Below, in pieces: positions 3,701 through 61,500 of a DNA stretch of 64,000 nucleotides. The notes beneath the pieces are model-generated. The model made no database searches and was not told where the DNA came from. It worked only from the letters and a program-made list of their open reading frames with translations. Where the stretch lies: positions 15,128,001 through 15,192,000 of the forward strand of contig CM119384.1 in NCBI GenBank assembly GCA_051294905.1. The letters run 5' to 3'. Source of the stretch: Botryllus schlosseri (lineage: Eukaryota). The stretch's first letter is position 1; every line of letters starts with the position of its first letter. A program made the translations under genes and the position numbers.

Positions 3701-6700
3701 TCAGTTGGAGTATAATATTATTATTTTTATTTTAAAGCACAATTGTTTTTTGTACGATATTCGCCTGTAAGCTATTTAGTGCAGTTTCTCGAAAGGTTCC
3801 GGCAATGGTCTGCCATATAGTATGTTCAATTGTTCATCTCATCTGTCCTGATATCTTTCATTTGTTGTTCTGATGTCTTGGTAGAACCTCTTCCCTTGCC
3901 AATCAACAAGTTGATCAGGAAATATATCAATATGACTGAAGAGGAAGTGAACTTTTCTGCTTATGTTTGTGCCGAAGTTTTCGATATGCAGATACCAATA
4001 CTCGGACCAACTGTTTGTAGTTGGGTGCTTTGTGATCATATAAAAAGTTTTTATTTACTACATCTTAGGAGAAATTACATGCAGTGAACTCCTTCCTAAT
4101 GCGAAAATTAGAATCTTTCATCGGTATTCGAATATACCAGATACCAGATTCAGGCTTCTCGTTCGATAGGGTTACTAGGTATACCGTACCCATTTTGTTG
4201 ACTCAGCGGAAAATAATCCATTTACCAGTCGAAAGAAATGAGACGCATATGAGTATTGTAGTTGAGCTTTTCAAGGACAAATTTTATAGTTTTATACTCT
4301 TCTTTAATCTTGGTAGAATGACCAATTGATACAGGAGAATATGTATTTCCGTTGTGCAAAAGTACAATTTTTAGGCTTCACAAACTGCTTTTTTGACAAA
4401 CAAATATTTTACATCATGTCATGTTAATATTTATAGAATGACTGAGAACAATTTGAGGGTTCTTCCTACTAAATTATCTATTTATGCGCAGTATAAAATT
4501 AGAAAAAACTGCGATTTTCTTCCTACCAAGTGAAATATTCAAGCGTTTTGAGCCTTTTTCGGGGTATAAATATCTTCCGACAAAGAGCCAATCTGACAAA
4601 ACTAGTGTGATATTCGTAATCAGCAACCTCAAAAACCCTAGAAACGGCTCTGAGATGTTCTGCTTAAAAATATTTTTTTCGGTTTGTTGACCAGTGTTAT
4701 CAATATACCAATAGTCAGACGCTAAATGCATTGTCCTACCTGACCTACACCGTTAAGGCGTAAGCCTATCTTCCCTTGCAGGTCCTCGTTGAAATTGTTG
4801 GCAAAGTGACGGAAGACATTGATTTTAAGGGATTATTATAGCATTTGATTGTTCCGATAGATACATTTGCTGACATTTAAAAAGTCAGCATGTACCACAG
4901 CAATGTGGAATAATTTGGCCGAGTCGTCGCAATCTACTGTTCATATATTAATACATCACTAAACTGAAATGTAGGGTTGGCATTTGCAATATGACTTCAC
5001 GTGACGTCATGGGTTCACGTTCACACAAAACCTTTCAAAGAAATTCGCATTCACACGAACCTGAACCTTTCAGGGGTTTGCACCATCCCTAGTAGAGGCC
5101 CTATTGACTACTCCAAACAAATCGGTATTGTTCAACCCGATAATGCTGATTTGGTGCGTCTCGCAAACTTTTTCCTTGTGGCCCCGGAATTTTTTTTAAT
5201 TTCATTATGGTCCGTCACGACTTTGAAACCAAACATCCCAATGATAGGCATAGTTTAGTGAGGTTTTTGGAGTCCACTGTCAATGATGCCTACCAAATAA
5301 CGTTCACCCAGTGACATTTCAAAACAGAGAACCACTCGAAGAAGCGGAATTTATTGAGGATTGCGTACTCAATGTTGTCAGTTCATGTGTTTTGAAGTAA
5401 AATGAAATCGGCAAATCTACAGTTCCCTACTCTCACGTTTCTATTTTGTTTTAAGCATTGAATTAATCAAAACCAACGTTCATTCAAAATTTTTAAACAT
5501 AGGTTAACGAGAATAACCATAAAATATCATTAATTATGATGTGTAGGGGTTGTAAATTTTATTAAAATCTGCATACATTAGCATATAATCTCCGTTTCTT
5601 GGATCACAAGCCTTTTGTTTTGACATTTTCGATTTTGGCATATGATCCTAATTATTCTATAGTGCGACCCACGAACCTGTGACAAATAAATTTTGATTTT
5701 GTATGCAGTCCCTTGCTCACAAAAGTTGAATTTATGACATCACAATGAAATGAAGTTTATTATTGTGTGATGATACGGTGCGTCTCCACCTGGGATGCAA
5801 GATGTTTGAAATCAGGCTGATATATCGTCAAAACAGTTCTGAGCAATTCCTTCAAGTGCTGACGAGAATTTAAGGACATTTTCGAAATTTTCTTGGCCAA
5901 ACTCTGCACTCTGCAGTTATTGCTAGCCTTTACAATACAAATCAAAGAAACATATTGGTATTCACCATTGCTAGCCCGGAAATGATTGCGACATGCGCTG
6001 GCATAATTAATAATTGAGTTCATTGTTGAACACAATGATTTATCATTGATTGATGACCAGGCATTCATTGTTGCGGGTGAAACGTTTACTACAGGGTTAG
6101 AAATTTGCAACAGTAACTCTCGAAATCGTGAACTCGATTGCGAAAGTTACAATTGCGAATTTCCAACCCTGTAGTGCCACCAACCCCGTTACTTTACAAG
6201 TCTTGCTTAAACCATAAGGAAAGAAACAACCACGCATAATCCTCTCTAGCAAAATAGCGAAACACTTGTGCAATCAATTTTGAGAGCCACTATCAAAGGC
6301 TGAATAAGCCGCAGTTTGCCCAACCCTGCTAACTGCTATCTGCGGTTATTGCTCATATATGTATTATTGTATAACTGTTATGACGATTTCAATCATCAAT
6401 ACAATTCGAATTTTTCAGATAGTCATGGTGCGGGTGATTCGAGACTTGATGGTTCAGCTGCTGGCTTCCATCATACCTTCCACATGGGAGAACTATTACA
6501 TCAAGCCAAGCAGCTCGAAGAAAGGAATAAGGAATCTCAAGGTTGGAAGGCATTTCCCCAACGTTTTCAGCCATTCATTTATTCTGTGTTTGTAGATCCA
6601 CAATTTGTAACTGCACCAAAGCAATGGAAGAATGACTACCAAGGTTTCCAACAAACCGCTTATGAAGATAATCCTCAGAAACAAGATACCCGTAACCCAT

Positions 6701-40847: not shown

Positions 40848-42617
40848 GTATAACAGTAACAGCAGAAAGGACAACCAATAATAATGTTGGTAGGTAATCC
40901 AATCAAGAGAGATAGCTTATGATTACCAAGATTTATCATCGGAGCAAATAATCAATGAGGACAATAAATTGACAATAAAACACTCCAGTAATGCTGTAAA
41001 AACAATTCTTTTTTAGTCCCATGAAGCAACATGGTGAAATAACAGGCCTAAAAACGCTGCTCAACTGGAAGGCCACCAAATTCCATCATGAGAGGCAACG
41101 AATTTAGCTCGAATAAGAGCCGGGAAATGGAACGAAAGGAAAGCTCACGACGCTTATCGACTGAGACAAGGGTGGCATAACGCTACTGAACTGAAATGAG
41201 ACAATGCAAAATGCGGTCAAGGTGTTATAGGCTACGTTACCGCAAAAACATTTCGACGTGAATAATAGGGCACAAAAAGTAGAGATGATTGTGAATCAAA
41301 ATTATTGTGGCTCGTGCGAACTCATTTATATAAGGTTAGCGTGAACTCCTACTACTGATCCCAACACTTCATCTCCGCAAGGCATATGTACACTTGTACA
41401 GTTGTGCAGTGTACGTAGTACGTACACAGGTTAGCATATATTTCTAGTATGCAACTATGCAATATCGCCATAGTGTATTGTGACGCTAAAAACTATGATG
41501 AAGTCACTATGGCTATGACACTTGATCTTCGTAAACTCTCTCTGTCGAGATCAGTGGTTCCCAACCGGTGGGGAATTCCAGGGTTTTTGGTGGAGAACAG
41601 ACGCAAGTCGCAAGGTAGAATATCGCGATTAAAGTTATCATTCACTGCTCTGGACTGCATGCGTCGATGATAATTTTATCGCGTGGTGTTGTGGTGTTCA
41701 CAAAAACACATCTTCAACTCTGGATATCCAATAATGGCGTCATAAACGCGTCTGGCACGAGTAGCATGAAACGTGCAGTGTTGGACAAATAGAAAATTTT
41801 CAGCTTTTCCAAAGTAGATTAGAATTAGATTACTGGCATTTCGCTCTAATTTATTGAAATTAGACAACTAGAATTATATCTAGTTGTCCAGGTCTGGAAA
41901 CGTGATGAAGCTTTCGCATAAGGATCACTTCCCTGGATATTTCTACGCGCGCGGAATCAAGTAGCATCGACACAATCGCGATATCGGATCCATTCATCAC
42001 ATCGGCACAGTGGGCATATTTCGGTTCGGTAAATGCATTCTGCCATGATTTGTGAATCTGGTTTTGTTCTCCTAAACTTCAATGATGCTTGCTACAAACA
42101 CTTGTTTGCCCGTATCATGACACAAAGAATTATATCGAATTCAACATTGAAGCTCACGCGAACACGCCACCTTGTCTTGGATCGGTTACTCCGCTCCACC
42201 TCGATATTATATTTGAAAGTGATCAATCAAACTATTTCCATAAAATCATTCTTCGAGCTACTCTTATTCGAATCGCATGGGACTCGTCGGAAGCCCCATA
42301 CGTAGCTGGCTTCACATCCACAAGCGAAGTTTTCTGTTTTCGCGTGAAATCAAACAATACCGAAATACGATGTGCACAATTTCTCGAAATAACAGATTCC
42401 TCGACTGCATGATGCAATTGTGACGTAACTATGTACCAAGATTATCAAGCCGGAACTGTGACCCACCCACCAAATATAAGATGATTGCTTTCAAATATAG
42501 TATCGAGGTGCAGTAGAGTAGCCTAACTGATCCAGCGTGTTCGCATAAAGCTTCAATACTTAATTCGCCTAAATTATTTTAGTGATAAAGATACACGGGG
42601 GCGGGGAGTTTGTAACA

Positions 42618-44430
42618 AGCATCATTAAAGTTTAGAAGAACAAAACCAGCTCCTCAAATCATGTCAGAATACATAAACTATAGTTATGCCAATCATTGCA
42701 CCGATATGAGGATTGGATGCGGATGCTAAGTCTATGCTTAACAACTCCACGCGTAAAAGTAGTCTGGGCATGGTACGGTATAGTATGGAATTATGGTATG
42801 GAACGAACTTTATGTATGGAATATGGAAAAGCGCAAGTATGGTATGGTATGGAAGTTTCCCAAATATGGTATGAAATTGATTTTCCATACTTCCATACTT
42901 TTTCCATACTTTGACTGTTTTGCCAAAGTCATGATAATGATCGTACTTTCGATTTGTCAAATTGATTGCATAGCTCAGAAAATCGCTCACTGTCCTTGTT
43001 CATATCTCAAATTGCGATTTATGACTCATCCACCCCGGTCGACATCTATTTGGAGACAAAGTTCCGCAACGCGCATATGAATAAAAGCATCATTAATGAT
43101 AATTATTCCAATCTAAATATCATAAAAACGAATGATATTCGACCGCTGTCGCGATACAACTTGCATTTCGCGATGTAAAATTGTATGCTAAGGTATATTC
43201 CAATGCAGTGGTTTCCAACCGGTGGGAAATTTTGGCGTTTCGGGTTCGGAATAGACACACTTGAAAAAAATCTTTACATTGTTGACCTCGTTTATTAAAT
43301 GTCTTTGTGAATTGCCGATCGTATCTCTAATATTTCTCAGTTCATTTGCAATTCAGCAATTCGTATCATATGTTCCTCCAATTAGCGAGAACTGTCTGGA
43401 TGGTGTGATACGCGAGCTTTCGCATAAGTTAGTATTCATTTGTGTGCGAAATAGCGTGCTTGAAATCTTACAGTTCGTTATAATAGCTAATATGCACTGT
43501 ACAATGTACATGAATATGTATTCACGGGGGATCGCGGACTCGTTAATTGATAGCATAGCCGGACTCGTTACAGATCAAATGACATATCTATTTATTTTCG
43601 AGTTATAGTATAGCATGCGAAAGTGTAGCTCATGGGGGCTTACATCTACCATATGCATAAGTTCGTCAACACCAGAAGGTTTATCTGACCTATTCATTAT
43701 TCGGTATCATTGTATCATTGGTGCGTCAGGGCTGTTTAAATGGATAATTTCATCAAAAATAATAAGAATATCAATGCCGGAACTTTCATCACATCGAAAA
43801 TAGAATATGGCTTGATATACAGATCGGGCAAGTTACGAAAGTATGGAAAAGGAATCAAATATGGAATGGAAGAATGTTGCCATGGTATAGAAAATTGTCC
43901 AGTATGGTATGGAAAGATTGTGGCGGGTATGGAGTATGGAAATTTCCCATTCCATTCCATACCATACCATGCCCTACAAATAATATCCAGATTAGTCATG
44001 TGGTGCGTAAAAAAACGAGAGAGACCAAAATACGAGAGAGGTCAGTTTATTCGATTATTACGTCACACTTAAAAGCATGAAATCGCGAAAACATTTTTGC
44101 AAAAATTGTACGAATCGATTTTCGCTATTGTATCAAGCATCATTGAAGTTTAGAAGAACAATACCAGGACCACACATCATGGCAGAATACATATTCTATC
44201 GATATGCCAATCACTGCACCGATATGAGGAATGGGTGCGGAGCGGATGTTACATCTATGCTTTACAACTCTACGCGTACAAATAATATCCAGATTAGTAA
44301 TGTGGTGCGTAAAAAACGAGAGAGGCCCAGATACGAGAGCGGTCAGTTTAGTTGATTATTACGTCACACTTGAAATCATGAAATCGCAAAAACTCTTTTT
44401 GCAAAAATTGTACAAATCGCATTTCGCTAT
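42618..44430. repeat. ~300-bp tandem duplication, first unit split by a MITE
   Basis: 42618-42763 plus 43977-44134 corresponds to 44135-44430. Confidence 0.8.
42764..43976. mobile_element. ~1.2-kb hAT-like MITE with GTATGG subterminal repeats
   Basis: Ends CTGGGCATGGTACGGTAT / ATACCATACCATGCCCTA; decayed 8-bp TSD AAAGTAGT vs CAAATAAT; an empty site is visible in the duplicated unit at ~44270-44290. Confidence 0.7.
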
Positions 44431-44449
44431 TGGATTTCATCGAGTAAAC

Positions 44450-47293
44450 ATGGAAATGTTCGCGAGCTCTGGTCAATTGGAGAGACTGAAAAGGAATAAT
44501 GTGGTGCTTACGGACTTCTGGAATAGCACTGAAGGCATCGCAGGATTCATCTTGAAAAAAATAGACTACGCTTTCGGCAACGTTGGCATCGTATACTCTT
44601 ACAATAACTGGAAAACATCAAATTTCTTCAACGCGATCGAGATGCAGCCCACATATGGTGGGTATAGCATGCATAAATTCCAAATGCAATGGAGGATAGG
44701 CAAAAGGCGGGTTAAGTTTGGAATTGCATACACTTACGATGGCCAAATCCGTATGGACCATAACGGCGGGGAATACTATAAAGTTTGTCGTAACAAGTGT
44801 CAGTACGCTGACTTAGTTCGACGCTATCGACAGTCGGAGCAAGCTCTGGTTTACATCAACGACGAAGAAGAGAGTGATTTTGAAACCGACGAGCTGAATC
44901 GACATGAACCAGAGACTATTAAATGGGACGATCAGGGTCTTGCGTCGGATATCATATCAGTAGAGAAGCTCTCGGGATATGTGCGGGAGATTTTACAAGA
45001 GACTCCGTCTCACCCATGCCGAAAGAGAAAGCCCGACGGGGCTGGTGCAACGCAAAAGAGACGGAAAATGGACATTTCCGCCGATTGGTTTGACGAAAGT
45101 CACGTCGCTTGCTCCATGAAGTTCGAAGATGATGGTGTTATACCCCGAGGCGTCGGGGTCTTTGTGTGGGATACACCGTACTGTGACAGCGACAGCGAGA
45201 GTGGAAGCAGCGTATCGTCTTATGATTCTGACGTAGATTGTTGCAGTGTGGCCACCGACGACTTGTCGTTAGATTCGGCACGTTTTACTGGCTTCGATGA
45301 AGAAGACCGATATAAGCCGAGGTTTTGGTTCTCGTTGTCGGTTTTGGATGATGAAGGTAATGAGTTTTTGCAAAATTGCTTGGATTTCGATGTCCCTTCC
45401 TCTGATCCCGAAATAACGGTCCGACAGTGTTCGAAGGACCACGATGCTGGATATTATCGCTCTGTCATAGCAGAACAGCCTAAATGCGTTCAAAACGATT
45501 ACGAGGATTGTATCGGGTATTCATACTCTGAGCAAGATCAGGGCAAACCAGTTTTATATTGTGCGTTGTCGGTCTGGCATCGCGAAGGGAACAAATTTTT
45601 GCAAGAATGTTTGGATCACGATTGTCAGTCTTCCACAGAAGAACAGTCTCGCACTGAATCGCAATCTGATAATCACCAGCCTGTTCGTGACGACGATAGG
45701 GCTGCGATTATTCCCGGCGCGGAGAACTTTTATTACATTGACGATTCAAGTGACTCCAGCGATGAGGAAGACGAGTATGAAAATTATTTGAAGGATAATG
45801 AATATTTGGAAAAGCAACTTGCGATCACGTCGTATTGCGAATTGACTGCGCAGTATCCTGATAGTAATGATGGTTACGATACATCTTATAATGGCGAACG
45901 ACCTACTACCAGTGGTGTATCGAGTGGAAAACCTGATGGTAGCACTGAACCCGGTGATCATTTTACTTTGCACGAAATGTCACAAACTGTTTATAACGGC
46001 GACGGAGCTGCGACCATTCCCGGAACAGGGAACTTCATGTACATTGACGAGCTGGATGACAGCGATGATGTTGACAGTTATCAAAATTATTTGATGAAAG
46101 TGGAATGTTTGGAAGAGCAAATTGCGATCATGTCGTATTATGAAGCACTTGCCGAGTGCCCGCATAACAATGAGGGTTTCGACACGTCGTTTATGTGCAA
46201 AGACAGCAACAGACCAACAACCAGTGGTGTCTCGAGTGGAAAACTTGAAAGTAGCGCTGAACGTGGCGATAATTCGGCTCTGCGCGAAATGCAAAGAGGA
46301 CTGGAGATCGAGTGTCGCAATGTTGTGGAATATTTTTTAGGCAGAATTTTGTATAAAGTCTGCAATGACCAACAGGTGCAGGATTTCAGTGAATCTACGA
46401 GAATCGAAGAATTACCGGAAGTCGTCTGCGATGAACTTCAAGACAAGGGTGAAAAAGAATCCAAATCAGTCTTAGTCGTTCCCTGTTCGGATCGCAAACT
46501 TGACCGAAGTAAATCGGTCCCAGCGGCACACAGTAATAAGGACAGCGAGGCGTTACGTTTGGACTCACCTGGAGCAAGGTTTGGAGTTCCATGGATTTTG
46601 GTGCGTTCGGGCATCAGAATGCGCAAATTTAGTCGTACCGTGGACTCCGTACGCCAATCTCGCGTCGGTTCATTAGTCTTACGAATGGGTACTTCATTAT
46701 GTCTTCCTGAAAGGTTTTCCATTGGAAAGGTCTTCGATCCAAAACGATTGCTTGTGAAGAATAATGTAAAATATCGCATGCAGTCTATTTCTGTGCCAAG
46801 ATCGAATCCAGCTGGAGCAATCAACTTGTGCGCTGACGATCCTTGGAAGCAAATTTTAAAAGAAGTCTTCCGGCGAGCGCAAAGACGAATATCGCACCAA
46901 GATAATCCTGTTCACTCGCCAACCGCGTCAGACGATATTCGGAACGATATGGCAGAGACACGTCTTCCGTTCCACATACGAACTGACCGTGCAAACCGAG
47001 TGAGACGTATTCGAGCAGCAAATGTCGTGATTGAGCCTTGTCAGGAACGGTGTAGACGCCGTCGACGACCCTTTCAACGGAATCGCAGCGAGTTCAATGC
47101 TTCAAGTACGAACACCTTCTCCGGCGATATTGTAGCGGACGAATTACCTACAATCAATTCAAGTAATTTCACGACTGGTGAAATCACTACATCGAAGTCT
47201 GCTATCAAAAGCAAATGTCGATATTTTAAACCTAAAAATATTATTCGTTTTTTATCTCAGCCTTTTCGAAAATGCAAATCTTTATTTAAATAA
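44450..47293 (+). CDS. Intronless ~947-aa protein with N-terminal CBM21-like (PPP1R3-type) domain, bipartite NLS and acidic repeats
   Basis: Single open frame 44231-47293. The likely ATG is at 44450 (MEMFASSGQLE), because the upstream part of the frame lies inside a duplicated repeat unit. The first ~115 aa follow the CBM21 pattern: IAGFILKKIDYAFGNVGIVYSYNNWKTS...HKFQMQW...RVKFGIAYTYDGQIRMDHNGGEYYKV. Confidence 0.75.
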   Translation: MEMFASSGQLERLKRNNVVLTDFWNSTEGIAGFILKKIDYAFGNVGIVYSYNNWKTSNFFNAIEMQPTYGGYSMHKFQMQWRIGKRRVKFGIAYTYDGQIRMDHNGGEYYKVCRNKCQYADLVRRYRQSEQALVYINDEEESDFETDELNRHEPETIKWDDQGLASDIISVEKLSGYVREILQETPSHPCRKRKPDGAGATQKRRKMDISADWFDESHVACSMKFEDDGVIPRGVGVFVWDTPYCDSDSESGSSVSSYDSDVDCCSVATDDLSLDSARFTGFDEEDRYKPRFWFSLSVLDDEGNEFLQNCLDFDVPSSDPEITVRQCSKDHDAGYYRSVIAEQPKCVQNDYEDCIGYSYSEQDQGKPVLYCALSVWHREGNKFLQECLDHDCQSSTEEQSRTESQSDNHQPVRDDDRAAIIPGAENFYYIDDSSDSSDEEDEYENYLKDNEYLEKQLAITSYCELTAQYPDSNDGYDTSYNGERPTTSGVSSGKPDGSTEPGDHFTLHEMSQTVYNGDGAATIPGTGNFMYIDELDDSDDVDSYQNYLMKVECLEEQIAIMSYYEALAECPHNNEGFDTSFMCKDSNRPTTSGVSSGKLESSAERGDNSALREMQRGLEIECRNVVEYFLGRILYKVCNDQQVQDFSESTRIEELPEVVCDELQDKGEKESKSVLVVPCSDRKLDRSKSVPAAHSNKDSEALRLDSPGARFGVPWILVRSGIRMRKFSRTVDSVRQSRVGSLVLRMGTSLCLPERFSIGKVFDPKRLLVKNNVKYRMQSISVPRSNPAGAINLCADDPWKQILKEVFRRAQRRISHQDNPVHSPTASDDIRNDMAETRLPFHIRTDRANRVRRIRAANVVIEPCQERCRRRRRPFQRNRSEFNASSTNTFSGDIVADELPTINSSNFTTGEITTSKSAIKSKCRYFKPKNIIRFLSQPFRKCKSLFK

Positions 47294-47539
47294 CTTTCAT
47301 GTTTTATTATCTTCTTAATACAAATAGATACGCTGTGCTCTTTACGGATTTTGATTTTTATTGTTGTAAGCATGTCGGCTTCCTGACGATTAGCAAATAT
47401 GGTATTAGGGACATTTCGGTGTCATGTGGGTTTATAATATTGACGGTTCCAACCTAATTTTACACATAGGGTGTTATTGTAAAGGTCTACTACATTCGTT
47501 GTTAAGAAGACTTCGCTTTCCTACGGGTGAGGGTAATCC

Positions 47540-52500: not shown

Positions 52501-55500
52501 TTAATCGAGGTTCGATTGATCGAATGAATATTTTAGCAGGGTGACTTCATTTCCTCGTTGAATTATACATGACGAACGCGGCTATCGGCAAACTACGAAA
52601 TTGGGCGCTCATTATCGCCGCCACGTCGGCGAAAACACGTCAAGGACGCGCGACGGACGGGTCAATTCGCGGTAGTGCAATACCAAAACCAAAACAACGT
52701 GATACGGCGTCCTACAATCAACCTTTGACTGCGGGGTCGGTAGGGCGCTATCCTGCCTAGCACTGAACGCAAGTGATGCGAAACTAAACTTACAGGGATA
52801 TCAAATAAGTAACAATGCATCGCGCAAAGCAAATTGCTTACGACGGCTTTATAGTGTATATATGCTGACTGGCGGATGACCGAATAGACTAAAACATGCA
52901 GAAATGTTCAGCAACGCTTGTGCAGCATACCAAACAGCGAAAAGACACGCACGGTCATTCCAACTGACCCTTTTCCACGCAGTAACAAACAGGCGCATAC
53001 CTTTTCAGTCGCTGCCTGTCGTTTTCGTCAAAGGTCGCGCTCCGCTCCAAATTCGCGTTGAATTTCGCCGGAGACTTCCCGTGATCGTTAAAAGACGACG
53101 ACTGCAAAAACGTCACAATGAGTACGTCTGTCACGTGACGCGCCAGCATAAAGTGGGTCTACACTCCACAGAGTCGCGGGGATATTGTCTTACCGTGCTG
53201 CTGTGTTTCGAGTCCAGGTTCACCTTGCGCGTTGACATCAGCGGACTGGCCGTTTGGTGGTCAATGGACGAAGCTCTGTGCCGTGTGAACCTCTAAAATT
53301 GTAAGTCACGATTTGGTAAAGTCAATTGACCCGGTTTAATGTAAGATTGTCAGTGAATTTGGTATTAGAAATGTGATGACTAATATTATCACGAGAGTAA
53401 TACATTGATACTGTATTATTAAATTCGAAAATGAATGTTTCACTGAATACGAACGTGAATTGTGACATACAGCTCCTAGTGAATTTGGCGCCAGGTATGC
53501 ATTAATGTAGTCGGGTTAAGCTAGATTTCACTAGTAACCTGATATAGTACCATGAACCTTGGTACTGTACATAATTTCACTTCTACAATCACAACTGACC
53601 TTGAAAGCTTCGAAAAAGCCGTTACTGCCTTCCTTCACGGTGTCGGCAGACGAAGCGTTGCTCAAATTATCGTGCGGCTCCATCTTGATGCCAAGCATGG
53701 CTTCCGTGGAGACGGCGATCTCGTCGTACAGTTGGTCCATCAACATCGTCCTGTCGAGCGCAACGAGACAATATCATTTCCCGTTCAAGCACGACCCGCA
53801 AAAAGCGACACAGTCACGAAAGCGGTCAAGTTAGCGGCTTTAGCCTACCTGCGTTATTTTCTCACGTGGTTAGCTCTTAGGCTAGATTCACTTCTACCGA
53901 ACAGTATTTATCACTTTCACAAGCGAAATTGTCATGAAAACTGGACGAAATCATGTTTGCATTAGTCCCTAAGACGCACTCTGCAATTTCTGTTTTACGA
54001 AACTGGGCAACGATGGCTACTATGATCACCTATGCAAATTATTCCTGCTCACATCAAAATATTGCAAGCCGACTTCATCTCCCCTTAAATAGACCTATAT
54101 GTCGTTTCTTATTCGAAGGTTTTGGATCGATGTGTAAATGCCGCTCTGCAACAACGATCAGACACTAACTAACACACTCCGGAATTGAGCCGTGCGGTGA
54201 CTATGCCGCACTACGAACTTTCTCCACACCGCCACAAGCACCACACATTAGCGGATACGGAAGTAACGCATATTAAAATTCCGAGCGCATATCAATTCAC
54301 AACAACAATAACACCGCCAAATCGTTGCCGTAACTGGACACCTGGAGCACGCGCATACCTGGTTCGGAATTGCAACTTCGCGAACTGCTCGGATTTGTAG
54401 CAGGCCCACTCGGCGTTGACCATCTTACAGTAGAGCCACTCCCGGAACGCGTCGTCTTTCGAGAAAATGGCCGGCTCCGGTAGCGACGGCTCGAAATCTG
54501 GTACGTCTTCCCGACACGTCACGGACACCTGAAAATCGAAGAGGGGGCGCTTGAAATCAGTTTTGCGGGGTCAGAATCGCACAGCGCACGCATCTATCAC
54601 CGATAGCCACTTGAACGCATGCAAGATGCACAATGCACATTGTACATGGTACAAAGCAAGCGTAGCGCAGATTTCAAAGCGCATTGATCACCCACGTTCA
54701 AAACTGCCCGCGACCACTGCATGAGATACAGCCAAATCAATGAAATACCAGCCGTTTCAGTGTAATCTCGCCAGAATCGAAATACAAAATGACAGATTCA
54801 ACTCGGTCGTCTACCCGTTATCTGCTCGTTGACATAATTCGTGATTGACGATCGACACGCGCCGGGCGCTACGTTACAATAAACTATGCGTACCTTGTAA
54901 CGACAGTCCGGCGTGCAGGCGTCGATGGGCTGGATGACGATGTAGGCGTGAAGAAAGTGCGAGGTAATCATGTTGGGCACGAAAGGCGTTTCGCCGTCTT
55001 GAAACACGATGGCGACTATGTCGTTGCCGATGTGACGCTTGCGCTGGAGCTGCCAAGGAAAACGGACGTGTTGACACACCTGCGACATACGGACCAGACG
55101 CGTCCGATTTCGTAGCGGCACACCGCTTTAATTACACATCAAAGCGGTGTCGAAGAGATCGTAAAATATTGAGACAATATGTCGTGAATCACACGACACT
55201 CACGGAATAGACCTCGTTAAATAACACGGAAATTTCTAAAGATCAGCATTAAGGCCTGGCGAAGTCAAGAATTCTGAGGTACATCAAAAACGCGCAAGTT
55301 AATACCGTTCACAAAACCAGACACGTACCCATACACCCGCAAATCTATTTCTGTACGCCTGCTTACTATCAGGACCAGATATGGTCTTGCGAAATGTGTA
55401 CCGCTAAAACAAGGTTGAGCGAAAGCGGAAATTCGTCTGTGACGCACACCGCGTTCAAGGCCGCCCAATCGAGACAGGTACTTGACAATGTCATTGCCGA

Positions 55501-58500
55501 GAGTGGTATAGCAAGCATATATAAACAGACGGCAAAGTATAGCGTAACCATGTAATTTTAAAAATAATATAAAACAGTACAGGCGGACAATCCGCTAGTG
55601 CATATATTGTAAGACGCCTACGCCAAGCCGTTACCAAGAAATCAAACTTCCACTAAATACGAATACAGCAATAGTATACGAAGTCCGTAAAGCCGTACCT
55701 GCTGGCGATCACCCTCGATGTAGGGCAGCATGGTAGAAACGTGGAACATGACTTCTTTGTCTGCGTATCGTCCGTACACGGAGGTATCTCCGGTGTGGCC
55801 GTGCTGCACGTCTAATCCCCCGCGAAAGCCGGTGAAGCCCTGTCATCAAAATTGTCGCGATTTGGAACATAAGCCTTGATTGTGCAGTTGTTTTTGGAAT
55901 AGGGGAAACTCAAGTGGGCCGACTTTAACAAACTACTAATCTCGTTAGTTCACGGTCAACTACTGACTATACAGCTCTAGTTCTAGTTGCGGATTTTGAA
56001 AAATTTAGTTCAAATCCCAGTTGGGCAAATTAAAAAATACTACAAACTAGAGAACCAAAGAACAACTAAAAAAACACGTTTCGTCGTTTGGCCCGAATGT
56101 ATCGTGATACCGTTGTTCTGTTGTGTGATATTCTTCCAGCCATTACTAGTTCAGATATTCATCACTATTAACAGTGGCATAAGCCTGTGGTATGTTGGGG
56201 GTAGGAACCCCTCCCATTTCATACTAGAAACTCAGCCGTATTGAAATGTTCTTTTCATCTTTAACATTTCTTAGTTTAATTGTAATTTAATAATTCGTAT
56301 TATACATTAGTTAGTTGTGTTTTAGTTAGATAGTTGTGGATTTTGGAGGTCGTCAGTTCAAGTTCTAGTTGCACATTTTGAAAACCCAGCAGTTTCTGCA
56401 GGTGGGCATTGGTGGAATAAAACAACCGTTACCTGCAGGTCGACCACATCGCCGACAAACTCCAAAAATTCCCGAAACGCGGGTGATTCTCCCCTATTAC
56501 CAAAGACCTCTTCCTCTTTGGCCTGGTTCGGCTTTTGATACAAAATCCCGAACTTGTTGGTCGGCGTCACAGTATGCTCGTCGAAGTTGAGAATAGAATC
56601 CCACGCGCCCGTGGACACCACCGGATAGAACCTGCGTGCAATCGCGCCATTGTTACGCGAGTTCGGCAGGAAAGCCAACCGGCCGCGCGCACGGCGTGTT
56701 GCAGGGAAATCGCCGATTGCTGTATCGCGTTACAGCCGACAATGCGCGCGATTGAAAGTGTTCGCGAATTGTCATACGCGCGCCAATACAGCGCAGCGCA
56801 CCGCATTGTACCGGCAACAGAAAATAGTTTGCGTTGAGCCTAGAAAGCTGTTCGACACAATGGGGAAAATATACGCCTCGGGCGATGCGCTAGTTCATGA
56901 CCATATAGGTTACTTGACGCTACTAGGGCTTTACATATTACGCGGAGTGTCTGCATTGAATGCACGAACTTACACACTTGACGATATATTTTTATATCAT
57001 TGTGTAAAAAATACACCATGTGAACCGTGTCAGGTATCATTCATGTAAATAATAATACAATTAACACATCAATATTTACCTCTAATTCTGTATATCGCGA
57101 TATTTCTATGTTATGTACGAAAGTCCACAAACCACAGCGTGTCACTGATGTAAACCATATACAATTAACATATATTTTACAGTACCTCTATTTGCGTGCA
57201 AAATTACACTATATATGGCGGTGTTTATGTATATTGTACAAACATCTCCCCACCCACAGTGTGCCACACATGCATATAACAAAAAAGTGAACATATATTG
57301 AGCATCACTTCTACGATTGTGTATAAAGGTACTGTATGGCGTATGAGACGAGTTAGCAACAACATAATTAAACGTAAACGAGGTTGCGTTCGTGGATTAT
57401 GCTTGTACTACCAGTGCAGCGTACTTATTCGCGGCGTGCTAACCGGAATTCCATACGCCAGGACGGGGATTGCGGATCGAAATGTGAATCGCGAAAATAC
57501 TTTGCATATTCAGGAAAACAATAGCATTCCTCACATCGACTCGCGATTAATCATAAGACCCGGCGCTGCGCCGGCACGCATCGGATATGGCGCTGCGCAA
57601 CGGGAGTCCGATTGCGAGGTCACGCGAAGGTAAGCTCGGCACTAATTTCAGCAACAAGACACGTTACCCCGGTCATTATCTCGACACTGCGCAAATGCAC
57701 GGAAAACGTATAGTATAGGACTTCGCGTTCCAAGACTGAAACACGTTCTCCGCACTTTGCCCGTTAATCATAATATTCCGTTTGTAACATGACAGATGGA
57801 GGAAGCATATGTGCTGGGCACGAACTACATATCGCGAACGCCCGTACTGGTTATGAAAACACGCCGGCCCCAGCTGCGAGGCCAAATGAATGAAGTACAT
57901 CATTTCAACTTTTATTAAATTATAATCTTCTGCAAGGTGATGTTACAACTCTCGTTACCAGGCGACGCGATAACCCATTGCGTTAAACAGCTGCCTTCCA
58001 GAGACCGCTCAAGCAGTAAGTGCATCAAACATAGCCAATTCGAAAAGTATGTTACAGCAATGTGATATCAAGAACAGTTCATCAGAATTGAACATCCAAG
58101 CGTCAATATTGACAGCGCATAAGCATTTTTGGAATGAGCATTTGTCTCTTTGTGACACGCCTGGTTATGAGGAATCGAGCGATTTAAATAACTCAATTCA
58201 GTTTAACAGCGTGTGGAATACACAATTAACATGCCCGAAACGCGTGGCGTGCGCAAGCCGACAAGGAAACACAATGTTACTATTTCCACAAGTGTACCGA
58301 CTGATGTCTACAACTGACGCGTAATAGGCACTTGCTAAGTATCTGAGAGGCGATGACAAGTGCTTTGTGGAAACTTCGAATTGACGCTGCAGTTTTGAGA
58401 AAAGGCCCAATAAACACTCCATAAAACACCAAACAATAACAAGGGCCAGTTTGACTCACCGGTCAGTGGTGATTTCATCACAGAGATTCTTCGCCCAATG

Positions 58501-61500
58501 GGCCGGGTTACCGCCCTCGTATGATTCGAATCGTTTTGCCCAGGACTGCGCCCTAGACCTGAAAGAAAGGACGCGTGTTAAGTCCGAGAATTCAGGTTGT
58601 TCAGGACATAGTTCGAATTTTAGACAGTCAACACGAATTTACATAACACACTGAGAACACAGTTTCATAACACACTTCATTCAACAAGTATTTACATAAC
58701 ACACTGGGAACACAGATAAATAACACAATTTATTTTATTCAATCGTTAGCCTCCTCGCAAGACGCGAACCTATAAAAGATTATGTGCGTGGCATTAATCA
58801 TCCCACATTTGCATGATTTTATGACAAGTCTTGGTAGCGGCGAAACGTTTTTTTGCAAATACGACCTAGCCACTTGCAACCGTGTCATATTTCATAAAGC
58901 ATCATTGCCATAATAGGGAAGTTGCTTCTGAAAGTAGGCGGCAGTTGTTTCGTGCTGGTTGCAGATTCTTCGCTTCTATTGTCTGCGCCGACTCAGGCCT
59001 GCGCGGACCATTTGAAAAGCCTGTTTCAATGGTTGCTTGCAAAGCTGCGAAATCTACTGAATGGAGGCTGTGATGTTCAATGCACTCGCGGTAACTCAGT
59101 TTCCCAGCGAGCGATTCGCTACATTTCCTTTCGATTAATACTCATCCGCACTTTGGATGATGGTTCGAAGGTCCAACACGCCTACGCGGAACGCCCTCAC
59201 TAGCAAGTGACTAGGGCGTCTGTAAGAAAGCGCTGATGTTTTGGAGTATCATATTATCATAAACGGGCTTCCACGGACGCAATAATCTGCAAACTACTGT
59301 AATGAACCGTCTTTGACAGGCGATGATATCCCCTTACAGATCCCATTCCCAATAACTAATCTTGTACTTTGTCAGAGCGACACAACGATAGACACCAAGT
59401 TAAATTCACAGGACCACAAACACTGTCGTTAACAACGCATACGCGTTCAATACTCGATAGAGCGCAGCGGATAAGCGTCAACACAATCCATTTCCTTTTC
59501 AGCACACGTCATAGTGGACCCATTGAATAGCGAGTATGTGGAATCCAGTCATTAATCGCTGCGTAGCCGAGTATCCATAATGTGCGTTCGGTATTATTGT
59601 CCGTTAACATATGATGCGTCTTCTAAATGAAGTTAATCTCACCTTAATAATAATCGTGTGAAACCTGCTTCTGATGTGACTGAATCCTCATGCTTTACAG
59701 ACATAACAAGCGGGCCGAGATTCTCATCGAAGGCGTAGAAATTAACGTGTTCCTGCAAGGAAACAGCATTGTACAAATCTCCGGTATAAACCGCGTTTTG
59801 GGAGGCAAACCAACTTTTGAGTCGGCGAAAGTGACAGAACGCACGTACCGAACTAGAAATCGACCGGGTTGCAACGCAACATAACCAAGCGTTGAATATG
59901 ACACCACTACAACAAGTTGCAACGCACGTGCACACCGCAGTTACATAGTTTCGATAACCTTGTAAATATCGACTAGATTAACGAATGTCGTGATGAGATG
60001 ACAAACGCTGTCAAAAGACGAGCATTAATGTCTTCTTTCAGGCACGGATTGTGATGCAATTGATTCAGGAGTGCTGGATTGCTACCGATAGGTAAACGAC
60101 ATCGCTAGTTTCTCTTACGAAGAGTAAATATGAATACACACGTTCGTATACTAGTAAGCATTCCCCGACTACTTTGCATAAAGTACCAAATTAACTACAA
60201 CACTATCTCTAGACAGCATATTGTTATAACTTCAGCCTGAAGTGTATAATACATGTAGCAAATCATAACAAGCACCAAGTACTGTCTATCAGTCAATAAG
60301 CGATCGATAGCCACCAATGACAAAATAGAATAACTTCAATACAGACACATTCAAGTGGACTCGCATTTAATCAACATCGACACTCGTCTAGAAAAGATAA
60401 TGACCGCTAATAATGAATACCTTTCCGTGAAAGTGTCTCCTGTACGAGGTCACCGTTTCCTCCCGTTCGATGCTCAATCGATCGCTTATCATGGCGGGTT
60501 GTTCTTTCGCGATGTCGGCGCTCAGGTACGGCGACTCGGGGTGGAATCCCTGCGCCCAGTATCCCCCCTGCGGGGGCGGGATTACTTGGGGATACGGCGC
60601 GCCTTTACGCAAAACCTCTTGGATGGACGGGTAAGTGTAAACCTGTAGATAGGAGCGCTGAAGTTTTTGCGAAGAAACTTTGGTACTTTTCATTGTGGTA
60701 AAGCCCCATATTAGACGTGTTCTAATATACACCAAATCAGTAATCGCAAATGTAAGTGTTCTAAGACACACGAAGTTGATCCTAAATGTCAAGTGTGCTA
60801 ATAACACTGACCAAATTGGTGGTAAATTTGCAGTGTTCCTATGTATACCAAAACGGCCATCAATTTTAATATCGCATCAATACGCGACATGTAAACATGA
60901 CATGCAGTCGGGCAAGAAGACACAGAAACGGCTGTTTTGATTAAACGCCTTGCATCCCAACGCCATTACATTCAGACTTCCGCGTCTATCACAACAATAA
61001 AACGAAGTCAACACCACGCCAACGTTGAAAACAACTCATTCAGAATTATTAACACGAACGGACAAGCGTAATCTGCGCAAGTCAAGTCAACAAGACGGCT
61101 ACAGTCAGTGTCTCGTGGCAGCATCCATCAATAACAAAAACATATTCATACCGGCTTATCGGCAGGCAGTGACACGACCGGCATCGGTGATCTCTGTTCA
61201 TCCAGCCTGGTTCCCTGGAGAGAGAAAAGATATTTCAATTGAACGGCAATGGGGTACATCGAATGTATAAAATCAATTCGCCACGATTCAACTCAAGGCG
61301 GCAGTAAAATAATATGAATTTAATCAACATCGATTCGATCTGCACTGCGACCGGTGACGTAGCGAGTAGCACACACAGAAACAGATACAATTCTAATTAC
61401 ACAGTAGTGCTGTAAGTGACGTGTTGATTAACACACTATGTTGCGTGTACGGTGCAATTGTGCATTCATCGCAATATGATGTCAGTCGTGTTACGCAACA

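What the first reader, a model, noticed from the sequence alone, without database searches (positions are those of the whole stretch)
44450..47293. Intronless CBM21 protein with an unusual architecture (possible retrogene, atypical PPP1R3 relative)
Seen: a 2.8-kb uninterrupted ORF in a region where the other genes have exons under 250 nt. CBM21 sits at the extreme N-terminus, followed by about 830 aa of novel acidic and then basic sequence. Established: PPP1R3 glycogen-targeting subunits place the RVxF PP1-docking motif upstream of CBM21 and have a W-D-x-N-x-G-x-N-Y signature. Here nothing precedes CBM21, the signature is MDHNGGEYY (Trp lost), and the only evident RVxF match (KRRVKF) lies inside the domain. 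Inference: a repurposed CBM21 fused to a lineage-specific tail.
Basis: partly seen in the sequence, partly recalled or inferred. Interest (0 to 1): 0.7.

Follow-up and report, generated by a model that had tools for sequence, protein, structure and literature searches.

The report
Sea-squirt CBM21 protein without PP1 motif
A sea-squirt-type genome has an expressed, intron-free gene whose protein starts with a worn-down copy of the glycogen-binding module of phosphatase-1 targeting subunits, lacks their phosphatase docking motif, and carries a long tail found so far in only a few other samples, so it looks like a glycogen module put to a new use.

Summary
Window 44450-47293 (+) is an uninterrupted 947-codon gene; the next longest ORF in the 64 kb has 157 aa.

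- **Domain.** Residues ~9-113 are a very diverged CBM21. Alone they score below Pfam's cut-off (E 0.048). A profile of four family members hits the PPP1R3C and PPP1R3B CBM21 structures at E 2.6e-7 and 7e-6. An AlphaFold model has solved CBM21 domains as its nine best PDB matches (PTG best, TM 0.72).
- **Family.** An exhaustive search of 1.84 billion proteins found only four relatives, from two other samples. All start directly with the domain. The full-length ones share six tail motifs and a C-terminal motif.
- **PP1 docking.** No relative has an RVxF motif anywhere. The window's RRVKF lies in a core beta-strand and reads RHM(S/T)F in the relatives.
- **Glucan sites.** Of 13 glucan-contact residues of PTG, the family keeps two (Phe, Trp) plus Asn→Asp.
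- **Expression and constraint.** RNA-like contigs from two studies cover 44425-47319 without a joint. pN/pS is about 0.37; dN/dS against a paralog is 0.58.
- **Paralog.** That paralog, 3.5 Mb away, keeps the tail but has lost the domain.
- **Retrogene.** Nothing supports this origin.

The scan listed this stretch once more from another reading, without follow-up.

Verdict: a real, lineage-restricted, RVxF-less CBM21 family, a new variant of a known kind; its function is inferred only.

The parts
44450..47293 (+). Coding sequence, 947 codons plus stop, no intron
   Evidence: ORF listing. Continuous RNA-like contigs over 44425-47319 with no joint inside. Start Met shared with the paralog.
44231..44449 (+). 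In-frame upstream extension of the ORF, probably not coding (promoter and 5' leader)
   Evidence: It overlaps the duplicated promoter block. The ATG at 44378 is out of frame in the paralog. Contig depth is 0 over 44158-44351.
44474..44788 (+). Diverged CBM21 beta-sandwich (residues 9-113)
   Evidence: Pfam CBM_21 over profile positions 2-112 of 113, below cut-off. Family profile against PTG 7qf7 at E 2.6e-7. Atlas top cluster is CBM21. AF2 model pLDDT 74; best PDB matches are CBM21 domains, TM 0.66-0.72.
44705..44719 (+). RRVKF (residues 86-90), the only RVxF-pattern match; lies in a core strand
   Evidence: Regex scan of all members. It aligns to the strand QKIEF of PTG and reads RHM(S/T)F in the relatives. 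The model has a strand at residues 87-96.
44756..44782 (+). MDHNGGEYY (residues 103-111), degenerate counterpart of WDNNxGxNY
   Evidence: Alignments with canonical CBM21 domains. The Trp position is M/I/Y/F across the family.
44795..44830 (+). Family-specific basic extension K-C-Q-Y-x-D-L-V-R-R-Y-R (residues 116-127), nearly invariant
   Evidence: Alignment A1. Predicted helix at low confidence. Absent from canonical CBM21 domains.
45020..45073 (+). Bipartite basic cluster RKRK-x8-KRRKMD (residues 191-208), NLS-like
   Evidence: K(K/R)RK(V/L/M)D is present in the window protein, P0001 and P0002, and the paralog has KRRKMD. P0001 reads PPKKRKVD. The resemblance to the SV40 NLS is from general knowledge.
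45206..45274 (+). Acidic Ser-rich motif SSVS-x-YDSD-x3-CS-x-AT-x-(E/D)LSLD (residues 253-275)
   Evidence: Conserved across the window protein, the paralog, P0001, P0002 and the L018 gene.
45314..45391 (+). KPRFWF-LS...G..FLQ.CLD motif, copy 1 (residues 289-314)
   Evidence: Alignment A2. tblastx match to L017 and L018.
45545..45622 (+). Same motif, copy 2 (residues 366-391)
45681..46291 (+). Two tandem ~102-aa repeats (45681-45979 and 45987-46291) holding F-x-Y-I-D-acidic run, LE(E/K)Q(I/L)AI.SY and RPTTSGVSSGK
   Evidence: Direct-repeat families D1, D4 and D5, spacing 303-312 nt, 72-80% identity. One copy only in the paralog.
46316..46363 (+). R-x-V-V-E-Y-F-L-x-x-I-L-x-x-V-C motif (residues 623-638), conserved in all members that reach it
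   Evidence: Sequences and alignment.
46610..47290 (+). Basic C-terminal region (residues 721-947, pI 11.3)
47228..47290 (+). C-terminal motif K-x-I-x-x-F-(I/L)-S-x-P-F-R-K (last 21 residues)
   Evidence: Shared by the window protein, the paralog, P0001 and P0002.
44277..44435 (+). Proximal promoter block with a CRE-like TTACGTCA at 44359-44366, 84-91 nt before the ATG
   Evidence: Conserved with the paralog and with both genes of another species, which have TGACGTCA (alignment A4). Function as a promoter is inferred.
43975..44133 (+). Distal tandem duplicate of the promoter block (TTACGTCA at 44058-44065)
   Evidence: Direct repeats D3, D6 and D7, spacing 301-302 nt, 85-98% identity.

Best explanation
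This is a real, transcribed, intron-free protein-coding gene. It belongs to a small, fast-evolving family found so far only in this sea-squirt-type genome and in two other sequencing samples.

The protein has three parts:
- a head: a strongly diverged CBM21 beta-sandwich placed directly at the N-terminus, plus a family-specific basic extension
- a long, probably disordered acidic middle with an SV40-like basic cluster and several conserved short motifs
- a basic C-terminal region ending in a conserved motif

It descends from the CBM21 of PP1 glycogen-targeting (PPP1R3) subunits but is not one of them. The RVxF docking motif is absent from the whole family, and the canonical glucan-contact residues are mostly replaced.

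Most likely (inferred) the head no longer works as a standard glycogen anchor. It would serve as a binding module for a different or much weaker ligand. The loops that form sites I and II are still among the conserved parts of the family, which suggests the same surfaces are still in use. The tail carries a function of its own, possibly nuclear, because a paralog has kept an intact tail after deleting the head.

Shown here: gene, family, fold, missing RVxF, replaced residues, transcription, moderate purifying selection. Inferred: loss or change of glucan binding, no PP1 binding, nuclear targeting, promoter function.
For: **Gene**
- 947 codons are open while the next ORF in 64 kb has 157 aa.
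- Contigs of two runs from two studies cover 44425-47319 at depth 22-39, with about 0 depth in the flanks and no joint. Raw RNA reads of a third run lie on 46098-47455.
- Of 56 differences between these contigs and the reference, the 37 listed are 17 synonymous and 20 non-synonymous, with no stop and no indel in the ORF. That gives pN/pS of about 0.37.

**Family**
- Exhaustive phmmer of 1.84e9 representatives gave 4 hits: P0001 E 4e-58, P0002 2e-45, P0003 1e-30, P0004 4e-17.
- P0001-P0003 begin 8-10 residues before the domain. P0004 is an 86-aa tail fragment. The full-length members share the tail motifs and the C-terminal motif.

**CBM21**
- All 4 domains hit Pfam CBM_21, best E 2.7e-4.
- Profile A1 against PDB: PPP1R3C E 2.6e-7, PPP1R3B E 7e-6, over the full domain.
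- hhalign against this genome's canonical CBM21 domains: E 1.2e-4.
- The best-matching protein-language-model cluster is CBM21.
- AF2 model pLDDT 74; its nine best Foldseek matches in the PDB are all CBM21 domains (PTG, GL, Rhizopus glucoamylase, GM).

**No PP1 docking**
- The RVxF regex matches only the window protein, inside a beta-strand. SILK and MyPhoNE patterns are absent from every member.
- RVxF is described as essential for PP1 binding and conserved in all G subunits (PMC6235537).

**Ligand residues**
- PTG site II is N177, F180, E181, K182, Y203, D214. Site I is R187, W193, Y196, C235, W246, N248, N253 (PMC9582199).
- In alignments the family keeps F42 and W54 and has D39 for N177. 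The rest are replaced.
- The best canonical CBM21 domain of this genome keeps the VxNxxFEKxV and WDNNxGxNY motifs, and the second nearly does (Tyr for the Phe).

**Tail works alone**
- The paralog at C14:18.738 Mb has an intact 695-codon frame and 54-62% identity over residues 185-947. It keeps the first ~27 residues but lacks residues ~27-180.
- dN/dS is 0.58 overall and 0.43-0.60 in most blocks.

**Own promoter**
- A block with T(G/T)ACGTCA lies about 85-95 nt before the ATG and is conserved across species.
Against: - No binding assay exists. Phe42 (the residue that inserts into the glucan ring in PTG) and Trp54 survive, so some glucan affinity is possible.
- The placement of one gap in the site II loop is ambiguous: HMMER aligns D39/F42 to N177/F180, while MAFFT shifts by one residue.
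- The confident AF2 model needed three canonical CBM21 sequences in its alignment. With the family alone pLDDT was 37, so the fold match is not fully independent of the sequence match.
- PP1 can be bound through motifs other than RVxF, and the CBM21 of GM itself touches PP1.
- X1 and X10 are not on record as RNA. I infer it from their depth profile.
- One bulk RNA run (X18) shows no reads on the gene, and the tissue of expression is unknown.
- dN/dS reaches 0.96 in residues 641-800, so parts of the tail may be unconstrained.
- NLS and promoter functions are read from sequence only.
Confidence: 0.6

Rival explanations
1. It is still a glycogen-binding protein, but a PP1-independent one. The head would tether the long tail, and whatever the tail recruits, to glycogen particles. 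This would work like the CBM20 protein STBD1 rather than like a PPP1R3 subunit.
For: The CBM21 fold is kept. The family keeps the Phe that is buried in the glucan ring and the site I Trp as invariant residues. The conserved N-G-G-(E/D)-(F/Y)-Y and N-W-K-T loops lie at the old sugar sites. The F-x-Y-I plus acidic run in the repeats looks like an Atg8-interaction pattern (this comparison is from memory).
Against: [quoted passage not shown] A basic NLS-like cluster is conserved. A paralog dispenses with the head. The F-x-Y-I pattern is missing in P0001 and P0002.
Confidence: 0.2
2. It is a PP1 glycogen-targeting subunit after all, docking PP1 by a non-canonical route: the internal RRVKF, the CBM21 surface, or an unrecognised motif in the tail.
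For: It descends from PPP1R3-type CBM21. The window protein matches even the strict RVxF pattern. The CBM21 of GM adds to PP1 binding (PMC6235537).
Against: RRVKF is part of a core strand and aligns to the strand QKIEF of PTG. Its Val is Met in all three relatives, and no member has RVxF, SILK or MyPhoNE anywhere else. The 8-12 residues before the domain leave no room for the RVxF and PhiPhi segment that lies upstream of the CBM21 in G subunits.
Confidence: 0.1
3. On origin: the gene arose as a retrocopy of a PPP1R3 mRNA that lost its 5' part (hence no RVxF) and then acquired the tail.
For: It has no intron over 2.8 kb. The domain starts right at the N-terminus, as a 5'-truncated copy would.
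Against: There is no A-rich tract after the stop, and I saw no target-site duplication. tblastn to the canonical CBM21 loci of this genome finds nothing, and identity to them is about 19-20%, so no parent can be named. The family with its tail and its own conserved promoter block predates the split from the other species. Canonical CBM21 genes at C14:17999814 and C15:22353676 also have the domain in one open frame. The paralogs share upstream non-coding DNA, so they arose by DNA duplication.
Confidence: 0.15
4. It is an expressed but functionless or decaying ORF, such as a young or dying gene kept open by chance.
For: dN/dS is high (0.58 overall, 0.96 in residues 641-800). A broken tandem copy lies next to the paralog. 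One member in another species carries a frameshift. One bulk RNA run shows no reads.
Against: The 947 codons have no stop in the reference or in two independent transcript assemblies that differ at 1-1.5% of sites. pN/pS is about 0.37. The domain, six tail motifs and the C-terminal motif are conserved across species whose synonymous sites are saturated.
Confidence: 0.05

Closest known systems
PPP1R3 glycogen-targeting subunits of protein phosphatase 1 (GM/PPP1R3A, GL/3B, PTG/3C and relatives)
   Same: CBM21 beta-sandwich with PPP1R3C and PPP1R3B as best sequence and structure matches. Like GM it is about 1000 aa: a CBM21 near the N-terminus, a long low-complexity stretch and a conserved C-terminal end.
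   Different: No RVxF or PhiPhi segment before the domain and none conserved anywhere. VxNxxFEKxV reads KKxDxxFx(N/T)V and WDNNxGxNY reads xD(H/D)NGG(E/D)(F/Y)Y. It scores below Pfam's cut-off. The C-terminal end is a basic motif, not a membrane helix, and the tail has no similarity to any PPP1R3.
Canonical CBM21 genes of the same genome (C14:17999814, C15:22353676, C14:17853315, C13:9204192, C13:9133592)
   Same: Same domain family. Two of them also lie on chromosome-scale contig C14.
   Different: They score 26-98 bits against Pfam CBM_21 and, in the two I read, keep the sugar-site motifs. The window's domain scores 14-19 bits, is 19-20% identical to them, and is invisible to tblastn.
Starch-binding domain of Rhizopus oryzae glucoamylase (CBM21 prototype)
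   Same: Fold match with 2djm, TM 0.56/0.71, 27% identity over 101 columns. Same two-site architecture as described in PMC9582199.
   Different: That domain is part of a secreted enzyme and binds starch at two aromatic sites. Here most site residues are replaced and the context is a long disordered protein.
STBD1 (CBM20 glycogen-anchoring protein)
   Same: An analogy only: a carbohydrate module joined to a long non-enzymatic protein without PP1 docking (from general knowledge, not tested).
   Different: A different module family (CBM20, C-terminal) and an N-terminal membrane anchor. No sequence relation was found.

Membership tests
PPP1R3 (PP1 glycogen-targeting G subunits) | CBM21 domain | tested here: met
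   Weak alone (Pfam E 0.048-0.0023, below cut-off). The family profile hits PPP1R3C and 3B at E 2.6e-7 and 7e-6. The fold match to PTG has TM 0.72.
PPP1R3 (PP1 glycogen-targeting G subunits) | RVxF PP1-docking motif (with PhiPhi) N-terminal to the CBM21 | tested here: not met
   Only 8-12 residues precede the domain in all four N-termini. No RVxF, SILK or MyPhoNE match exists in any relative. The window's RRVKF is a core strand and is not conserved. The requirement is stated in PMC6235537.
PPP1R3 (PP1 glycogen-targeting G subunits) | Conserved glucan-contact residues (VxNxxFEKxV loop, WDNNxGxNY loop) | tested here: not met
   Of the 13 PTG contact residues (PMC9582199), 2 are kept (F, W) and one is Asn to Asp. 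The Trp of WDNN is M/I/Y/F.
PPP1R3 (PP1 glycogen-targeting G subunits) | Physical binding of the PP1 catalytic subunit, glycogen, and glycogen synthase or phosphorylase | not testable with these tools
   This needs pull-down, ITC or co-sedimentation. I did not run a complex prediction because I do not claim binding.
CBM21 (Pfam PF03370 / CAZy family 21) | Score over Pfam's gathering threshold (28.9 bits) | tested here: not met
   14.3 bits for the whole ORF and 18.6 bits for the domain. The best E among the four members is 2.7e-4.
CBM21 (Pfam PF03370 / CAZy family 21) | Eight-strand immunoglobulin-like beta-sandwich of CBM21 type | tested here: met
   AF2 model pLDDT 74, core 76-90. The top nine PDB matches are all CBM21 domains. 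Caveat: the alignment contained three canonical CBM21 sequences, and the family-only model failed.
CBM21 (Pfam PF03370 / CAZy family 21) | Binding of alpha-glucans | not testable with these tools
   Residue loss argues against standard binding but is not a measurement.
Processed retrogene | Intron-free copy of an intron-containing parent gene | tested here: inconclusive
   Intron-free: yes. Parent: none identifiable. Two canonical CBM21 genes also have an unsplit domain.
Processed retrogene | Poly(A) remnant and flanking target-site duplication | tested here: not met
   There is no A-run after the stop. The repeats found flanking the gene are a promoter duplication and MITE-like arms, not a target-site duplication. 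Age could have erased such marks.

The most novel reading that the evidence does not exclude
This is the first animal CBM21 family uncoupled from protein phosphatase 1. It would be a nuclear or nucleo-cytoplasmic scaffold protein that reuses the former sugar-binding surfaces of the CBM21 sandwich, plus a new basic helix, to bind a protein or another polymer. It would be driven by a CRE-type promoter and evolve fast, as reproductive or stage-specific genes do. The domain-less paralog would be a natural 'headless' variant.
Probability: 0.3. Interest if true: 0.6.

Novelty: new variant of a known kind. Interest (0 to 1): 0.45.

Why it matters
To my knowledge, CBM21 in animals occurs only inside PP1 glycogen-targeting subunits, and the two papers read here describe RVxF plus CBM21 as their common design. 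A conserved family that keeps the fold but drops both the phosphatase docking motif and most sugar contacts shows that this module can be recruited for something else. It also offers natural comparisons: canonical CBM21, the diverged head, and the headless paralog. These could be used to ask which residues make a CBM21 bind glycogen or glycogen synthase.

The family is also a clear case of a lineage-restricted gene built from an old domain and a new disordered tail. The practical reach is modest, because the function is unknown and the family is narrow.

Tried and rejected
- **Word-indexed protein search, full length:** no hit. The exhaustive search was needed.
- **Word-indexed search with a canonical CBM21 exon of this genome:** one hit only, too few for a deep alignment.
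- **AF2 on the four family domains alone:** pLDDT 37, unusable.
- **tblastn of the domain against the genome's canonical CBM21 loci:** nothing, so no parent could be named.
- **Family-profile search of the whole genome:** only this locus.
- **Pfam, PDB profile and Atlas searches of the tail:** nothing beyond noise. The weak hits ecTbetaR2 (E 0.013), End3 and MAJIN were rejected as chance.
- **Synteny between the window and the two contigs of the other species:** none outside the gene. A DNA search of L018's flank in this genome gave no match, and papers naming the two SRA runs gave none. I could not name the other species.
- **Earlier notes of the scan on CBM21, PPP1R3 or glycogen:** none.
- **Trans-splicing or an upstream exon at 44425:** the bases before it are TT, not AG, so the 30 unmatched letters of one contig are more likely an allele or an effect of the duplicated promoter. 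This stays unresolved.
- **Transposable-element or viral origin:** rejected, because of low copy number, no TE domains, and relatives with a conserved promoter block.
- **Complex prediction with PP1:** not run, because I do not claim binding and a negative would not count.
- **AKAP-type amphipathic-helix pattern:** the V-E-Y-F-L-x-x-I-L-x-x-V motif fits one that I recall from memory. I did not test it.
Full report
**1. Observation**

The frame 44231-47293 (+) is open for 1020 codons. No other ORF in the 64-kb window exceeds 157 aa.

- The paralog shares this Met (MEMF here, MDML there), while the in-frame ATG at 44378 is out of frame in the paralog and opens a short uORF there.
- The relatives from other samples start at the same point.
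- RNA-like contigs begin at 44425.

The product is 947 aa. Residues 1-128 are basic (pI 9.7), 129-640 acidic (pI about 4.1) and 721-947 basic (pI 11.3).

**2. Is the head a CBM21?**

Taken alone the evidence is thin:
- Pfam CBM_21 scores E 0.048 on the ORF and E 0.0023 on the domain. Both are under the 28.9-bit cut-off, although they span profile positions 2-112 of 113.
- phmmer against PDB sequences gives PPP1R3B E 0.009 and PPP1R3C E 0.014.

The exhaustive search supplied three more copies of the domain. With them the case becomes solid:
- Each of the four domains has CBM_21 as its Pfam match.
- Their profile hits the PPP1R3C CBM21 at E 2.6e-7 and PPP1R3B at E 7e-6 over the whole domain.
- hhalign against canonical CBM21 domains of this same genome gives E 1.2e-4, probability 55%.
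- The protein-language-model search puts CBM21 clusters first, at score 0.93 with 189 of 256 features shared.

AlphaFold failed on the four-sequence alignment (pLDDT 37). With three canonical sequences added it gave pLDDT 74, with the core at 76-90. That model's nine best PDB matches are all CBM21 domains: PTG (TM 0.72, rmsd 2.4 Å), GL, Rhizopus glucoamylase and GM. Because canonical sequences were in the alignment, I count the fold result as consistent rather than independent.

**3. The family**

phmmer against 1.84 billion cluster representatives returned only four proteins, all from Logan assemblies of two runs:
- P0001: 1106 aa, from SRR25569784.
- P0002: 475 aa, from SRR23343704.
- P0003: 196 aa, from SRR23343704.
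- P0004: an 86-aa fragment whose source run I did not look up.

P0003 is the front of a gene whose frame slips at the basic cluster and continues in L018:5154-5978.

P0001, P0002 and P0003 start with Met plus 8-10 residues and then the domain. The members share this order of modules, as far as each one reaches:
- the head
- a nearly invariant K-C-Q-(Y/F)-x-D-(I/L)-x-R-R-Y-R extension
- an acidic linker
- K(K/R)RK(V/L/M)D
- SSVS-x-(Y/F)DSD-x3-CS-x-AT-x-ELSLD
- KPR(F/Y)(W/Y)F-x-LS...G..FLQ.CLD
- LEEQ(I)AI.SY
- R-x-V-V-(E/D)-Y-F-L-x-x-I-L-x-x-(I/V)-C
- a C-terminal K-x-I-x-x-F-(I/L)-S-x-P-F-R-K

The tail has no Pfam, PDB or Atlas relative. The contigs of the other species share no flanking similarity or DNA identity with this genome, and I could not identify those species. 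Earlier notes of the scan describe this genome as sea-squirt-type.

**4. Copies in this genome**

Only the window locus carries the family's head. On the same contig, 3.5 Mb away (C14:18737909-18739993, minus strand), lies an intact 695-codon paralog:
- It is 54-62% identical over residues 185-947.
- It keeps the start Met and about 27 residues.
- It has lost residues ~27-180, that is the CBM21 core and the acidic linker.

A second, truncated copy with stop codons sits beside it and has the same deletion. Since the relatives in other species have head plus tail, the head was lost in the paralog, not gained here.

The paralogs share about 120 nt of upstream non-coding sequence, so they arose by DNA duplication.

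**5. Is it a working gene?**

Transcription:
- Contigs of runs X1 and X10 (different studies) cover 44425-47319 continuously at depth 22-39, with no joint inside.
- Depth is 0 just upstream (44158-44351) and near 0 downstream. A genomic library would not give that profile, so I read both runs as RNA although they are not on record as such.
- Raw reads of RNA run X22 lie on 46098-47455. Bulk RNA run X18 has none. Expression is therefore real but conditional, and the tissue is unknown.

Selection:
- The contigs differ from the reference at many sites. Of the 37 listed differences, 17 are synonymous and 20 non-synonymous, with no stop and no indel. That is pN/pS of about 0.37.
- Against the paralog, dS is 0.48 and dN 0.28, so omega is 0.58. 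It is 0.43-0.60 in most blocks and 0.96 in residues 641-800.
- Between species, synonymous sites are saturated while the head keeps 43-47% identity.

Together this shows moderate purifying selection on a fast-evolving protein.

**6. PP1 docking**

A scan with the loose and the strict RVxF patterns, SILK and MyPhoNE found a single match in the whole family: RRVKF in the window protein. This motif:
- aligns to the strand QKIEF of PTG and ERMEF of GL
- is a strand in the model, residues 87-96
- reads RHM(S/T)F in the relatives

The literature read here states that all G subunits carry a conserved RVxF that is essential for PP1 binding, placed upstream of the CBM21 (PMC6235537; PMC9582199). The defining docking feature is therefore absent.

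**7. Sugar sites**

PMC9582199 lists the PTG contacts:
- Primary site II: N177, F180, E181, K182, Y203, D214, conserved in PTG, GM and GL.
- Site I: R187, W193, Y196, C235, W246, N248, N253.

In the alignments the family has:
- D39 for N177 and F42 for F180, if the one-residue gap is placed after the Phe as HMMER does. MAFFT shifts by one.
- Small variable residues for E181 and K182.
- An invariant Glu for Y203.
- A shortened loop at D214.
- A hydrophobic residue for R187.
- W54 for W193.
- Ser, Pro or Ala for Y196.
- M, I, Y or F for W246.
- H or D for N248.
- Y or F for N253.

The best-scoring canonical domain of this genome has the standard VxNxxFEKxV and WDNNxGxNY motifs, and the second differs only in a Tyr for the Phe.

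The old site loops are still among the most conserved parts within the family (N-W-K-T and N-G-G-(E/D)-(F/Y)-Y are invariant). I take this as a hint that the surfaces are still used, but for a changed ligand.

**8. Start of the gene and origin**

A block upstream of the ATG is conserved between this gene, its paralog and both genes of the other species. It contains T(G/T)ACGTCA about 85-95 nt before the ATG, and a T-rich/AAATTG element about 45-55 nt before it. In the window the block is tandemly duplicated: 43975-44133 and 44277-44435. This argues for an own promoter directly in front of the coding sequence and against a hidden upstream exon.

For a retrogene origin I found no poly(A) remnant, no target-site duplication and no parent. 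Two canonical CBM21 genes of this genome also have an unsplit domain. The retrogene idea is therefore neither needed nor supported, although an ancient event cannot be excluded.

**9. Reading**

The best-supported account is a lineage-restricted gene family that took a PPP1R3-type CBM21, lost PP1 docking and most glucan contacts, and joined it to a new, largely disordered tail with a conserved SV40-like basic cluster. P0001 even reads PPKKRKVD; the comparison to the SV40 signal is from general knowledge.

I give this account about 0.6. The rivals are:
- glycogen scaffold without PP1: 0.2
- non-canonical PP1 subunit: 0.1
- functionless ORF: 0.05
- retrocopy origin, a separate question of history: 0.15

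It is a new variant of a known kind: interesting to people who study PP1 targeting and carbohydrate modules, but narrow in range and without a demonstrated function.

Noticed in passing
window 43975-44133 and 44277-44435: The roughly 160-nt promoter block of the gene is tandemly duplicated (period 301-302 nt, 85-98% identity). Each copy carries a CRE-like TTACGTCA. The same element is TGACGTCA in front of both genes of another species.
   Followed up: partly
G000:C14:18737909-18739993 (L008:1909-3993, minus strand): Intact 695-codon paralog that keeps the tail and the first ~27 residues but has cleanly lost the CBM21 core and the acidic linker. Its expression was not checked.
   Followed up: partly
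G000:C14:18741233-18742446 (L008 about 5236-6446, minus strand): Truncated tandem copy of the paralog with several stop codons and the same CBM21 deletion. It lacks the basic C-terminal region.
   Followed up: partly
window about 43713-43975: Contigs and reads of three runs match up to 43975 and then continue into three different unrelated sequences. This stretch, rich in TATGG-type repeats, therefore looks like a dispersed repeat that is transcribed elsewhere.
   Followed up: no
window 42033-42099, 42608-42674, 44128-44192: Three copies of a 65-67-nt sequence. The first is inverted relative to the other two (88% complementary), and one lies between the two promoter copies. They look like MITE-type ends.
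   Followed up: no
window 54801-55121, 56361-56678, 59642-59935 (minus strand): Exon-sized ORFs match Rap_GAP (E 2.9e-19) and the Rap-GAP dimerisation domain (E 1e-7). A multi-exon Rap-GAP gene lies on the opposite strand downstream, converging on this gene. RNA reads of X18 start at about 48232.
   Followed up: partly
L018:5154-5161: In the other species, the gene that P0003 begins changes frame exactly at the basic K-K-A-K cluster. This is either an assembly slip in an A-run or a real frameshift.
   Followed up: no
G000:C14:17853315-17858105 and C14:17999814-18000113: Two canonical CBM21 (PPP1R3-type) genes lie on the same contig, 0.7-0.9 Mb from the headless paralog cluster. The one at 17.85 Mb has an intron at profile position 79; the one at 18.00 Mb has the domain unsplit.
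   Followed up: no
window 46316-46363; P0001 residues about 700-1000: The invariant V-E-Y-F-L-x-x-I-L-x-x-V stretch fits an amphipathic-helix pattern like that of kinase-anchoring proteins (recalled from memory). P0001 carries about five extra degenerate copies (A-E-A-V-L-C-D-I-V-N-E-T-C). Not tested.
   Followed up: no
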